Of a DNA stretch of 64,000 bases, positions 43,962-46,171 are shown piece by piece. The notes below the pieces were generated by a model. That model did no database searches and had not been told where the DNA came from. It saw nothing but the letters and a program-made list of their open reading frames with translations. Source of the stretch: Chrysemys picta bellii. Taxonomy: Eukaryota. Position 1 is the stretch's first letter; every line of letters starts with the position of its first letter. The translations under genes were made by a program, and so were the position numbers. The stretch spans positions 17,918,001 to 17,982,000 of the forward strand of contig NC_088812.1 of NCBI RefSeq assembly GCF_011386835.1. Direction: 5' to 3'.

Positions 43962-44424
43962 AGTTCAAAAAGCGTCCACGTCGGTTAACCTCATAGACTC
44001 TCTAGTGTTCATCCGAGCTGGTGGTTCCGGGACTTGACCTGATCACTCATCATTTTCTTAAAAAAAAAAAAAAATCAGCGAGCATATATAACTATGAGAA
44101 TATGCATCTCCTACACTGGAACTGTTGGGAAAGACCCGATGTGAATGCGCAACTCCCTAACCCACCCGTCAGCCAGCGTTGGTTTCTATGGTCTAAAAGA
44201 TTGTCAGCAGCATTGAGTGTAATCTGAGTGTGATGTTGAGTACGACCCACTATCCTTTCATTGACAAGCCGAACAGGTATGGTTTGGTTTCCCTCCAAGC
44301 AATAAGGTTTGTTGGGCTGTGTGCGATATTTCTCCCCGCCCCCAGACTGCTCTGGCTTTGTTGTTGGTCCCTATTCCAGACGGCATCAAAGATCAGTCTT
44401 GGAACCAAGTCACTGTCCTATACG

Positions 44425-44635
44425 AAGCAACAGAGGGTCCTGTGGCACCTTTGAGACTAACAGAAGTACTGGGAGCATAAGCTTTCGTGGGTCAGAACCT
44501 CACTTCTTGCATCTGAAGAAGTGAGGTTCTTACCCACGAAAGCTTATGCTCCCAGTACTTCTGTTAGTCTCAAAGGTGCCACAGGACCCTCTGTTGCTTT
44601 TTACAGATTCAGACTAACACGGCTACCCCTCTGAT
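44425..44635 (+). mobile_element. PLE-derived inverted element, copy F, 13-bp TSD, downstream of the HOXC12 stop
   Basis: TSD actgtcctatacg at 44412-44424 and 44636-44648; 84-bp inverted arms 44425-44508 / 44516-44599 with 1 mismatch. Confidence 0.9.
44509..44549 (+). ncRNA. Minimal type-I hammerhead ribozyme motif, copy F, sense to HOXC12; predicted cleavage 44545/44546
   Basis: GCAT CTGAAGA A GTGAGGT-TCTT-ACCCAC GAAA GCTT ATGC, identical to copy A. Confidence 0.75.
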
Positions 44636-46171
44636 ACTGTCCTATACGGTAACGTAGGTTTTAGTGCCGGGTGTTCATTCTCTGGAGTGGTATGGCTCCT
44701 TCATTCAGCTCCCGCCCATTCTTAGGGTGAACGGTTCGCCAGTGGTACATATTTCCAGACCCATTTTCATTACAAGTCGAGGGTTCCCGGCGAACAAAAT
44801 AACGGGATTGGTCAGTAGCTATAGGAAGAAGAATGTATAGCAATGTGTAGCAGGTTGTCCCTGAGCTAGGAACTTAGCTCCGATACCTGGCGCTTCTTGC
44901 ATGGTGCTTTGCTCAAAATAAATGGGATGGTATTAAAATGAGTCCAGGCCCCGCACTCACGCACCCAGCCACAAGCTCCACCGAAAATCCTTCGACGCAA
45001 AATGGAATTTACTTCCAAATTAAACTGAGCCTTTCAGAGATTCCCTCTGAAACCAAAACCAAGTGCGTTTTCTGCACTGGCCCCGATTGTATTCTTATTA
45101 GCTGCTACTTCAAGTCATTTTGTGTGCTTAAACACAACTCCGCTGCAGGAGTATTTGTGCCATTTTACTGTGTTTATTGATGGCGGCACAGAAAAGAAAA
45201 TACCCTTTTGTGGCGTTCACCCATGGCGTCAAACTACAAATATACTTTCTTCCTAGAGCTGTCTTTAAACATTAACTTCATCGCTTGGTTTTTATTTTAG
45301 AAAGGAAAGAGCAGGTTTTGATTTTTTATTTTTTTTTAGGATGACTTCTAGTCAAGTAGACAGAAAAACACAAAAATCAATGGCCGCTTTCCCTCGGAAC
45401 CAGACTAGTGACACATTCAATTTTCCATCACCCGCAGTTCTTCCTTAACTCAGACGCTCTCCACATTTATGGGGGTGCGGTCCTTTTATTTAGGAAAAAT
45501 GTGGGGGAGACCCGGTCATTTCCCCCTTCCCCACACCGTTCATACCCCATAGGCCTACTGCGCTCCTCCTTCACAGAGGGGCTGGCTGAATATTGTGTGT
45601 GTTTTTTTCCTGTAGGTGTGTTCCGATTTACTGCAGAAAAATAATAATTGGCTTAATCATAATGTGTGCATTCCACCAGCCTTGTACAGCGTCCCCAGCT
45701 TTCTTGGAAAGAAATGTAGCTGCAGCGCTGGGCAGATATTTCCTACCCTTCTGCCCGCAAAGCAATATTTAGAGGGGGTGGTGGACATCAGTTACCAGGG
45801 TTAAGATAAAAGGGGACGTTGTAGCTTAGATTTTTGCCACTACAAGCTTTGCTTCATTCGTTTTATATAGGATGGATTAATTTTATTACAAAGCAACGTT
45901 CTCTGGGAAGCCTAAATTATTACCACGTGCTGCCGGTTCTCTGCGTTCATGGTCATGACCGAACAGTAGTGGCAAAGAATGCTTTTATTTACGAGCTGCA
46001 AAGGACGTATTCTAGTCCTTAAAAATGCCCCCCGGTTTGAAAGCTGGCCTTTTCTTCAGCTCTATTTCCCATGTCTGTGCCAAAAACATCCAGGAGTGCC
46101 TACCCCTCCACTCACCTCCACCTCACTGTCCCCCGCATGTCACCCCCCCCCCCTTTTTTTTTTAAATTAAA

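What the first reader, a model, noticed from the sequence alone, without database searches (positions are those of the whole stretch)
44412..44648. Sense-strand hammerhead ribozyme motif locked in an 84-bp hairpin in the probable HOXC12 3' UTR
Seen: a young insertion (13-bp TSD actgtcctatacg) 464 nt after the HOXC12 stop, with no AATAAA/ATTAAA between the stop and the insertion (first AATAAA at 44917). It carries a full minimal type-I hammerhead with canonical CUGAAGA and GAAA on the mRNA strand (44509-44549, predicted cut 44545/44546). It is preceded by its own antisense copy, giving 84-bp arms with 1 mismatch. Established: hammerheads occur in some vertebrate 3' UTRs and cleave mRNA, and long dsRNA is an ADAR/Dicer/Staufen substrate. 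Inference: the antisense arm is transcribed first and should sequester the ribozyme, so a Hox mRNA could carry a self-cleaving element held off by cis-antisense, or a dsRNA that is edited, retained or diced into siRNAs against the whole repeat family.
Basis: partly seen in the sequence, partly recalled or inferred. Interest (0 to 1): 0.92.

Follow-up and report, generated by a model that had tools for sequence, protein, structure and literature searches.

The report
Penelope retroelement hairpin after HOXC12
The hairpin with a hammerhead motif just downstream of HOXC12 is one ordinary copy of a very abundant turtle Penelope-like retroelement, whose known dimer-dependent ribozyme motif almost certainly cannot act here, although the copy does seem to lie in transcribed sequence.

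Summary
There is a target-site duplication of up to 13 bp, two 84-nt inverted arms with one mismatch, a 41-nt minimal type-I hammerhead motif on the + strand, and no AATAAA or ATTAAA between the HOXC12 stop and the insertion.

The structure is not special to this locus. It is a textbook short insertion of a Penelope-like element (PLE): two 5'-truncated copies joined head to head, with the optional ~33-nt tail at one end only. The window holds five more copies with variable junctions. A whole-genome run holds about 19,000 contig pieces at 90% identity or better.

The hammerhead is the published PLE "min-HHR", which has been reported in turtles. It has no helix III and needs a second sense copy to form a dimer. 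No such copy is nearby. Forcing the ribozyme fold costs about 50 kcal/mol against the hairpin. Self-cleavage, or a ribozyme "held off" as a switch, is therefore very unlikely.

Small assemblies that hold none of the HOXC12 intron hold 45-85% of the 3' flank, and one of their contigs includes the element's 3' junction. The hairpin is therefore probably inside an RNA. Its strand and its link to the HOXC12 mRNA are unproven.

A double-stranded-RNA effect on HOXC12 remains possible but has no evidence. Interest is low to moderate.

The parts
43602..43961 (+). Open frame holding HOXC12 exon 2 (homeobox). The stop codon ends at 43961. Exon 1 starts at the ATG at 41968.
   Evidence: ORF list. The homeodomain ends ...[24 protein letters not shown]. 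All named homologues of exon 1 are Hox-C12.
44412..44424 (.). Left copy of the target-site duplication (at most 13 bp)
   Evidence: Exact direct repeat of 44636-44648
44425..44508 (-). Inverted, 5'-truncated copy of the PLE 3' unit (antisense arm). It has no tail. Its hammerhead core is incomplete: read on the minus strand it shows GCAAGAAG instead of GCATCTGAAGAAG.
   Evidence: 84 nt with one mismatch to the forward arm; alignment A1
44509..44549 (+). Minimal type-I hammerhead motif. Helix I is GCAU/AUGC. The core is CUGAAGA, followed by an unpaired A. Helix II is 3+3 bp with a bulged A and loop UCUU. Then comes GAAA and the palindrome AGCU, which can form helix III only in a dimer. The predicted cut is after U44545.
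   Evidence: Descriptor scan and fold of the isolated motif. The features match the min-HHR of PMC4209133. No Rfam hit.
44516..44602 (+). Forward copy of the PLE 3' unit (sense arm, then the body end ...GTTGCTTTTT)
   Evidence: Alignment with five other copies. Tail-less copies in the whole-genome run X15 diverge at about 44600-44605 (table 7).
44603..44635 (+). [quoted passage not shown]
   Evidence: Present in 4 of 6 copies in the window and absent in the copies at 5164 and 39773. In X15, loose ends occur at about 44605 and about 44636-44638. The tail is described in PMC8557442 and PMC11167929.
44636..44648 (.). Right copy of the target-site duplication
44917..44922 (+). First canonical AATAAA after the HOXC12 stop (ATTAAA follows at 44932 and 45019)
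1..141 (+). Second young copy of the same subfamily (95% identical), cut by the window start. Its centre is a perfect palindrome, cagATG|CATctg. It has a tail and sits next to a (TAGA)n microsatellite.
10363..10561 (+). Older copy (~79% identical) with the same layout of inverted arm, forward arm and tail, and a 13-bp TSD, tgactcccttaaa. Here the complete hammerhead-like motif, with core CCGACGA, lies in the inverted arm.
21776..21990 (-). Older copy with a short inverted arm joined at a different point. Its forward copy reaches about 50 nt upstream of the motif. It has a tail, the TSD tagaagttaat and the core CCGATGA.
5164..5259 (+). Older copy with no tail and no inverted arm; core CCGAAGA

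Best explanation
Positions 44425-44635 are one retrotransposition product of a Penelope-like element (PLE). Two 5'-truncated copies of the element's 3'-terminal unit are joined head to head. The optional 'tail' of about 33 nt sits on the forward copy only, and a target-site duplication of 10-13 bp flanks the whole.

How it most likely arose (inferred): the PLE GIY-YIG endonuclease and reverse transcriptase cut and extend both DNA strands. Each strand primes a copy of the RNA's 3' end, and the two incomplete copies are joined.

The hammerhead is the family's inherited min-HHR and is a passenger here. It needs a second sense copy to build helix III through the AGCU palindrome, and none is available. 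In any transcript that spans both arms it is locked in an 84-bp duplex.

The insertion lies about 460 nt after the HOXC12 stop, in sequence that appears to be in mature RNA. Its realistic consequence, if it has one, is that of a long near-perfect RNA hairpin in a 3' UTR. No sign of selection or function was found, so a neutral or slightly harmful insertion is the default.
For: Architecture:
- TSD, 84-nt arms with one mismatch, and a tail on one side only.
- Both arms share the two variants that set this copy apart from the subfamily majority (44555/44469 and 44571/44453; table 3). They therefore came from one template in one event.

Family:
- Six copies lie in the window. Their 5' truncation points and inversion junctions vary, the tail is optional, and the TSDs differ in length at 11 and 13 bp.
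- One copy abuts a microsatellite.
- 19,460 contig pieces in whole-genome run X15 match at 90% or better. Many loose ends sit at about 44506-44509, about 44605 and about 44636-44638.

Literature:
- PLE insertions are 5'-truncated, often carry an adjacent inverted 5'-truncated copy and a 30-40 bp tail at one end, have the hammerhead in the pseudo-LTR, and favour microsatellites (PMC8557442).
- The tail is the stretch between two reverse-transcription start sites, the protein cuts and extends both strands, and hammerhead cleavage is not needed for insertion in vitro (PMC11167929).
[quoted passage not shown] They are inactive as monomers and weakly active as dimers, and are reported in turtles (PMC4209133).
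- Non-bird reptiles are rich in Penelope elements (PMC4350176).

Energetics: the hairpin has -176 kcal/mol, and the best fold with the hammerhead enforced has -126.2 kcal/mol. The isolated motif folds no better than shuffles (z = -1.4).

No other sense motif lies within 43962-46190.
Against: - No PLE reverse-transcriptase/endonuclease ORF was linked to this family in the window. PLE membership rests on architecture and motif.
- No Rfam hammerhead model matches.
- Both young copies begin their forward arm at almost the same base, just 5' of the motif. This could mean a short non-autonomous unit (retrozyme-like or SINE-like, mobilised by PLEs) rather than random truncation.
- Nothing here rules out a double-stranded-RNA effect on HOXC12.
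Confidence: 0.85

Rival explanations
1. The hairpin acts as a post-transcriptional element of HOXC12 (or of an overlapping transcript). The 84-bp duplex would be edited by ADAR, bound by Staufen, retained in the nucleus, or cut by Drosha or Dicer into small RNAs. That would lower or modulate HOXC12 output in this lineage. This is compatible with a PLE origin; the rival claim is that the copy has a function.
For: - The site is probably in mature RNA. Small assemblies X1, X2, X7 and X11 hold 0.00 of the intron's words but 0.45-0.85 of 43965-45000.
- An X1 contig joins the tail at 44610 to the unique flank and runs on to about 46190.
- There is no canonical poly(A) signal before the insertion.
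- The duplex is long and nearly perfect.
- Inverted repeats in mammalian 3' UTRs are known to be edited and retained (established knowledge, not tested here).
Against: - The strand of the RNA is unknown, and contiguity with the HOXC12 coding sequence is only inferred.
- No A>G differences appear in X1 contigs. Contigs drop rare variants, and inside the hairpin they mix all copies.
- No small-RNA data were available.
- Copies with the same layout recur elsewhere in the window, so nothing singles this one out.
- Presence in related species was not established.
Confidence: 0.12
2. One reading: a self-cleaving hammerhead in the HOXC12 mRNA is kept off by its cis-antisense copy and could cleave the mRNA when released.
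For: The core (CUGAAGA...GAAA), helix I, helix II and a permitted cleavage-site nucleotide (U17) are all present on the + strand. Hammerheads in 3' UTRs that cleave mRNA exist in mammals (the Clec2 genes; cited in PMC6155905).
Against: - The motif has no helix III. Such min-HHRs showed no detectable cleavage as monomers and only low cleavage as tandem dimers or trimers, mostly at non-physiological Mg2+ concentrations (PMC4209133).
- No second sense copy is nearby. The other arm is antisense, and its own core is deleted.
- The hammerhead fold costs +49.8 kcal/mol against the hairpin.
- The antisense arm is transcribed first, so the duplex can zip up from the loop before helix I is complete.
- Older active subfamilies carry CCGANGA, with C at core position 4, and PLE insertion in vitro does not need cleavage (PMC11167929).
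Confidence: 0.03
3. The element is a foldback DNA transposon or MITE with long terminal inverted repeats, or the inverted arm is an assembly artefact.
For: It is a TSD-flanked element made mostly of two inverted arms. Craig et al. note that complex PLE structures are often misassembled in short-read assemblies (PMC8557442).
Against: - The element is asymmetric, with a 33-nt tail on one side only.
- The inversion junction differs between copies, and some copies have no inverted arm.
- TSD length varies (11 and 13 bp).
- The TSD encloses arm, arm and tail exactly. A spurious arm would not give that.
- The 3' junction is found independently in contigs of X15 and X1.
Confidence: 0.03

Closest known systems
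Penelope-like element (PLE) insertions with an inverted 5'-truncated copy and a one-sided 30-40 bp tail (Evgen'ev & Arkhipova 2005; Craig et al. 2021, PMC8557442; PAc of Anolis, PMC11167929)
   Same: It is 5'-truncated. An inverted 5'-truncated copy abuts the forward copy and forms an inverted repeat. The optional ~33-nt tail is on one end only. The TSD length varies, the unit carries a hammerhead motif, and a sister copy lies at a microsatellite.
   Different: It is very short (211 bp): only the last ~90-125 nt of the unit, present twice. No ORF or full pseudo-LTR is present, so the link to an element that encodes RT and GIY-YIG is inferred. The forward arms of both young copies start at almost the same base, which may point to a short non-autonomous unit.
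Minimal hammerhead ribozymes of PLEs (min-HHR; Cervera & de la Pena 2014, PMC4209133; Lunse et al. 2017, not readable here)
   Same: [quoted passage not shown] It has no helix III hairpin; a short palindrome (AGCU) could form helix III only between two copies. The motif class is reported for turtles.
   Different: Helix II carries a bulged A in this young subfamily. The copy has no tandem partner. Older copies in the window have C instead of U at core position 4. Cleavage was not tested.
Hammerheads in mammalian 3' UTRs (discontinuous Clec2 ribozymes) and the intronic amniote HH9/HH10
   Same: A hammerhead motif on the sense strand of a vertebrate gene's non-coding transcript region.
   Different: Those are complete, efficient ribozymes conserved at orthologous loci. 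This is a repeat-family copy without helix III and with no Rfam match, and it is locked in a duplex.
Inverted-repeat Alu pairs in mammalian 3' UTRs (ADAR editing, nuclear retention, Staufen binding)
   Same: Two inverted copies of a retroelement form a long intramolecular RNA duplex in a probable 3' UTR.
   Different: Here one insertion event made both arms, only 7 nt apart and 99% complementary. No editing, retention or small-RNA data exist for it.

Membership tests
Hammerhead ribozyme, PLE min-HHR class (PMC4209133) | Conserved core CUGANGA ... GAAA with a non-G nucleotide at the cleavage site | tested here: met
   CTGAAGA at 44513-44519, GAAA at 44538-44541, U at 44545
Hammerhead ribozyme, PLE min-HHR class (PMC4209133) | [quoted passage not shown] | tested here: met
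   GCAU/AUGC, unpaired A44520, and a 3+3 bp helix II with one bulged A. Older copies have an unbroken 6-bp helix II, and its closing pair changes from U-G to U-A on one side only.
Hammerhead ribozyme, PLE min-HHR class (PMC4209133) | No stable helix III; a small palindrome allows helix III only in a dimer of two sense copies | tested here: met
   GAAAGCUU contains the AGCU palindrome. There is no monomer helix III. No partner copy lies on the + strand within 43962-46190.
Hammerhead ribozyme, PLE min-HHR class (PMC4209133) | Self-cleavage at the predicted site | not testable with these tools
   Needs in vitro transcription or RACE. The thermodynamics argue against it in this context.
Rfam hammerhead families (Hammerhead_1, _3, _II, HH9, HH10) | Score at or above the gathering threshold of the covariance model | tested here: not met
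   No hammerhead hit at gathering score or at E <= 10 on 351 nt or 61 nt. Only generic miRNA-hairpin models matched, all below threshold.
Penelope-like element insertion | 5' truncation, frequent adjacent inverted 5'-truncated copy, 30-40 bp tail at one end, TSD | tested here: met
   compared with PMC8557442 and PMC11167929
Penelope-like element insertion | Sequence continuity with an element that encodes a PLE reverse transcriptase and GIY-YIG endonuclease | not tested
   The window has no full-length copy, and no vertebrate genome collection was available to the tools.
HOXC12 3' UTR | The site is present in mature, spliced RNA that is contiguous with the HOXC12 coding sequence on the + strand | tested here: inconclusive
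   - Intron-free small assemblies hold both flanks.
- One contig carries the 3' junction.
- Strand could not be shown.
- Contigs covering 43965-44396 were left out in all runs, including whole-genome runs, presumably by the human-likeness filter.
- The X1 contig runs past the AATAAA at 44917 to about 46190.
MITE / foldback DNA transposon | Symmetric terminal inverted repeats at both ends and a fixed TSD length | tested here: not met
   One-sided tail, variable junctions, copies without an inverted arm, and TSDs of 11 and 13 bp

The most novel reading that the evidence does not exclude
The PLE foldback has become a lineage-specific regulator of HOXC12. The 84-bp hairpin in the 3' UTR would be edited, retained or diced, or its hammerhead would cut once helicases or editing open the duplex. 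HOXC12 dosage in posterior, tail or skin tissues of this turtle lineage would then differ from that of relatives lacking the insertion.
Probability: 0.06. Interest if true: 0.6.

Novelty: new member of a known kind. Interest (0 to 1): 0.2.

Why it matters
As it stands this is a routine annotation: one copy of a very abundant Penelope-like repeat, carrying a ribozyme motif already described for turtles.

It has two modest uses. First, it is a clean, compact example of the head-to-head plus one-sided-tail product that fits the recent finding that a PLE protein cuts and extends both DNA strands. Second, if the copy really sits in the HOXC12 3' UTR, it is a natural test of what a near-perfect 84-bp hairpin does to a developmental mRNA in a reptile. 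Orthologues without the insertion could serve as controls, if any exist.

Similar "ribozyme in a hairpin" findings elsewhere in this genome probably have the same explanation.

Tried and rejected
- **Rfam scans.** The whole window at gathering score gave nothing. At E <= 10, 351 nt around the element gave only sub-threshold miRNA-hairpin models, which reflect hairpin shape. The isolated 61 nt gave one chance snoRNA hit. A miRNA-precursor reading is rejected.
- **Read laying.** It was meant to show RNA coverage from the stop codon across the insertion, and presence or absence in two related species. Depth at 43965-44396 is zero in all four runs, including the whole-genome run, so the contigs were filtered and this is no finding. 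Contigs of organisms B and C did not cover 44640-44990, so the age and distribution of the insertion stay open. All runs were contigs, so there is no information on strand, RNA ends or expression level.
- **Run types.** No run on record is labelled RNA. RNA status is inferred from the absence of intron words.
- **Protein atlas on exon 1.** It only said "posterior Hox". The homologue search settled HOXC12. Its Logan hits read from exon 1 through into the intron in other species and say nothing about the 3' UTR.
- **Lunse et al. 2017 (PMC5785218).** Not held, so the tolerance of the core for C at position 4 could not be checked.
- **The search of earlier findings.** Lookups by place and by sequence were blank.
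- **cofold of two isolated units.** It did not return the textbook dimer with an AGCU helix III, so this is no support for dimer formation.

Full report
**1.

The 13-bp direct repeat ACTGTCCTATACG lies at 44412-44424 and 44636-44648. Between the two copies lie two inverted arms, 44425-44508 and 44516-44599. They are 84 nt long with a single mismatch (44493 against 44531) and are separated by a 7-nt loop, GCATCTG. About 36 nt of unpaired sequence follows.

As RNA the stretch folds into one hairpin of -176 kcal/mol, with z = -26.7 against shuffles.

A strict descriptor for a minimal type-I hammerhead asks for:
- a 4-bp helix I;
- the core CUGANGA;
- an optional unpaired base;
- at least 5 bp of helix II;
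- GAAA;
- a U and then a non-G nucleotide before the return strand of helix I.

In the 64-kb window it matches only 44509-44549 and an identical 41-mer at 15-55. Simulated windows give 0.01 matches.

The upstream gene is HOXC12. Exon 1 begins at 41968, and all of its named homologues are Hox-C12. Exon 2 ends with the homeodomain and a stop at 43961. A Hox13-type homeobox lies about 11 kb upstream on the same strand.

No AATAAA or ATTAAA lies between the stop and 44425. The first AATAAA is at 44917.

**2. It is one copy of a very abundant repeat family.**

BLAST of the 211-bp element against the window finds five more copies:
- 1-141: 95% identical, cut by the window start;
- 5164-5259;
- 10363-10561;
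- 21776-21990 on the minus strand;
- 39773-39819.

The alignment shows three things.

- The 3' end comes in two forms. Copies stop either at ...GTTGCTTTTT or about 33 nt further on, at ...CTAACACGGCTACCCCTCTGATA. Four of the six copies carry this tail.
- The 5' end varies. The copies at 5164 and 21776 extend upstream of the hammerhead motif.
- An inverted 5'-truncated copy abuts the forward copy in 44425 and 10363. It also does so in 21776, but at a different junction. Copy 1, cut by the window start, also shows a palindromic junction. In 10363 the complete motif sits in the inverted arm. In 21776 the inverted arm is only about 50 nt long.

The TSDs are 13, 13 and 11 bp. Copy 1 abuts a (TAGA)n microsatellite.

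In a whole-genome run of the same species (X15), 19,460 contig pieces lie on the element at 90% identity or better, and 5,493 of them at 99% or better. Loose ends with dissimilar flanks cluster at three places:
- about 44506-44509, where many forward copies start;
- about 44605, where tail-less copies end;
- about 44636-44638, where tailed copies end.

**3. This is the published signature of Penelope-like elements.**

- Craig et al. (PMC8557442) describe PLE insertions as heavily 5'-truncated. [quoted passage not shown] They place the hammerhead in the pseudo-LTR and report an insertion bias for microsatellites.
- The Anolis PAc study (PMC11167929) shows that the tail is the stretch between two reverse-transcription start sites. 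It shows that the protein cuts and extends both DNA strands, and that hammerhead cleavage is not needed for insertion in vitro.
- Non-bird reptiles are rich in Penelope elements (PMC4350176).

In this copy the inverted arm ends at the tail-less terminus and the forward arm carries the tail.

Both arms share the two bases that distinguish this copy from the subfamily majority (44555/44469 and 44571/44453; table 3). The arms therefore came from one template in one event, and the TSD encloses both. My inference is that priming from both cut strands and joining of two incomplete cDNAs produced the head-to-head product.

The link to an element that encodes RT and GIY-YIG was not tested, because the window has no full-length copy.

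**4. The hammerhead.**

The motif matches the PLE "min-HHR" of Cervera and de la Pena (PMC4209133). Its features there are a short helix I, an unpaired base at the 5' end of a long helix II, and no helix III. A small palindrome, here AGCU within GAAAGCUU, can form helix III only between two sense copies.

That paper found no detectable cleavage for a single motif. It found low cleavage for dimers and trimers, mostly at non-physiological Mg2+, and it notes such motifs in turtles.

Rfam's hammerhead models do not recognise the motif even at E <= 10. Membership is therefore in the min-HHR class, not in a curated Rfam family.

Three things argue against activity here:
- No second sense motif lies anywhere in 43962-46190. 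The other arm is antisense and has lost five bases of its own core.
- Enforcing the hammerhead helices and an open core costs +49.8 kcal/mol relative to the hairpin.
- The antisense arm is made first, so the duplex can zip up from the loop before helix I is complete.

The three older copies all carry CCGANGA, with C at core position 4. Only the young subfamily has CUGAAGA. To my knowledge U4 is essential for activity, which suggests that catalysis has not been continuously required for this family's spread.

**5. Is it in the HOXC12 3' UTR?**

No run on record is labelled RNA. However, several small assemblies of 54-134 million letters, from five studies and three species labels, hold 39-85% of the sampled words of 43965-45000. 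Four of them (X1, X2, X7, X11) were also listed in the intron search and hold 0.00 of the words of the HOXC12 intron, 42620-43620. Whole-genome runs hold 1.00 of the intron words. Those four therefore behave as spliced RNA.

A share of 0.85 cannot be reached without words from both sides of the insertion. The upstream flank makes up 44% of the stretch, the element 20% and the downstream flank 35%.

An X1 contig joins the tail at 44610 to the unique flank and continues to about 46190 at depth 24.5. So RNA almost certainly reads through the element's 3' junction.

Three points remain open:
- **Strand.** Contigs cannot show it.
- **Contiguity with the coding sequence.** Contigs over 43965-44396 were dropped in every run, including whole-genome runs. 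I take this to be the human-likeness filter acting on contigs that reach the homeobox. That is a weak hint of contiguity in X1, and no more.
- **The 3' end.** The X1 contig runs well past the AATAAA at 44917. Either the 3' UTR is long or another transcript overlaps.

No A>G differences appear in X1 contigs. Contigs are a poor test of editing.

**6. Verdict.**

The "ribozyme held off by cis-antisense" reading mistakes the generic product of PLE insertion for a designed switch.

The best-supported account is a neutral, fairly young PLE head-to-head insertion in a transcribed region 3' of HOXC12, carrying an inert passenger min-HHR (confidence about 0.85). A double-stranded-RNA effect on HOXC12 is possible (about 0.1) and testable. 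Regulated self-cleavage is very unlikely (about 0.03).

Two first-reader notes elsewhere in this genome describe the same kind of Penelope hairpin with a hammerhead. I did not check them. They agree with the family-wide picture.

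Noticed in passing
window 5165-5204 (+), 10412-10451 (-), 21852-21891 (-), against 15-55 and 44509-44549: The three older family copies have CCGANGA (C at hammerhead core position 4), with the CpG still intact. Only the two young copies have the canonical CUGAAGA. 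The canonical core of the young subfamily may have arisen by CpG-to-TpG change in its master copy, or the two may be separate lineages.
   Followed up: partly
window 44561-44569 with 44611-44619 (same boxes in the copies at 1-141, 10363 and 21776): An invariant TGTTAGTCT box in the body can pair over 9 bp with AGACTAACA in the tail. RNAalifold predicts this stem in all four tailed copies, but there is no covariation and one copy has a mismatch. It might be a 3' stem-loop used at the reverse-transcription start sites.
   Followed up: partly
window 1-30 and 44500-44520: Both young copies start their forward arm at almost the same base, just 5' of helix I of the hammerhead. Many copies in the whole-genome run also start at about 44506-44509. 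This hints at a short non-autonomous unit of about 125 nt rather than random 5' truncation.
   Followed up: partly
window 44610-46190: A contig of an RNA-like run covers at least 1.5 kb beyond the insertion and more than 1.2 kb past the first AATAAA. Either HOXC12 has a long 3' UTR here, or an overlapping non-coding transcript of unknown strand lies between HOXC12 and HOXC11.
   Followed up: partly
window 46180-46350: Another interspersed repeat (...ggagatatcctatctcctagaactggaagggaccttgaaaggtcatcgagtccagcc...), preceded by C- and T-runs. The RNA-like contig breaks there.
   Followed up: no
window 44060-44074: A genomic A15 tract lies about 100 nt after the HOXC12 stop. It could cause internal oligo-dT priming and false 3' ends in RACE or 3'-tag data.
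   Followed up: no
window ~32260-32480 (+): A Hox13-type homeobox exon (...[29 protein letters not shown]), presumably HOXC13, lies about 11 kb upstream of HOXC12.
   Followed up: no
window 18122-18269, 36294-36465, 53418-53570: Three runs of N (148, 172 and 153 nt). They were left untouched.
   Followed up: no
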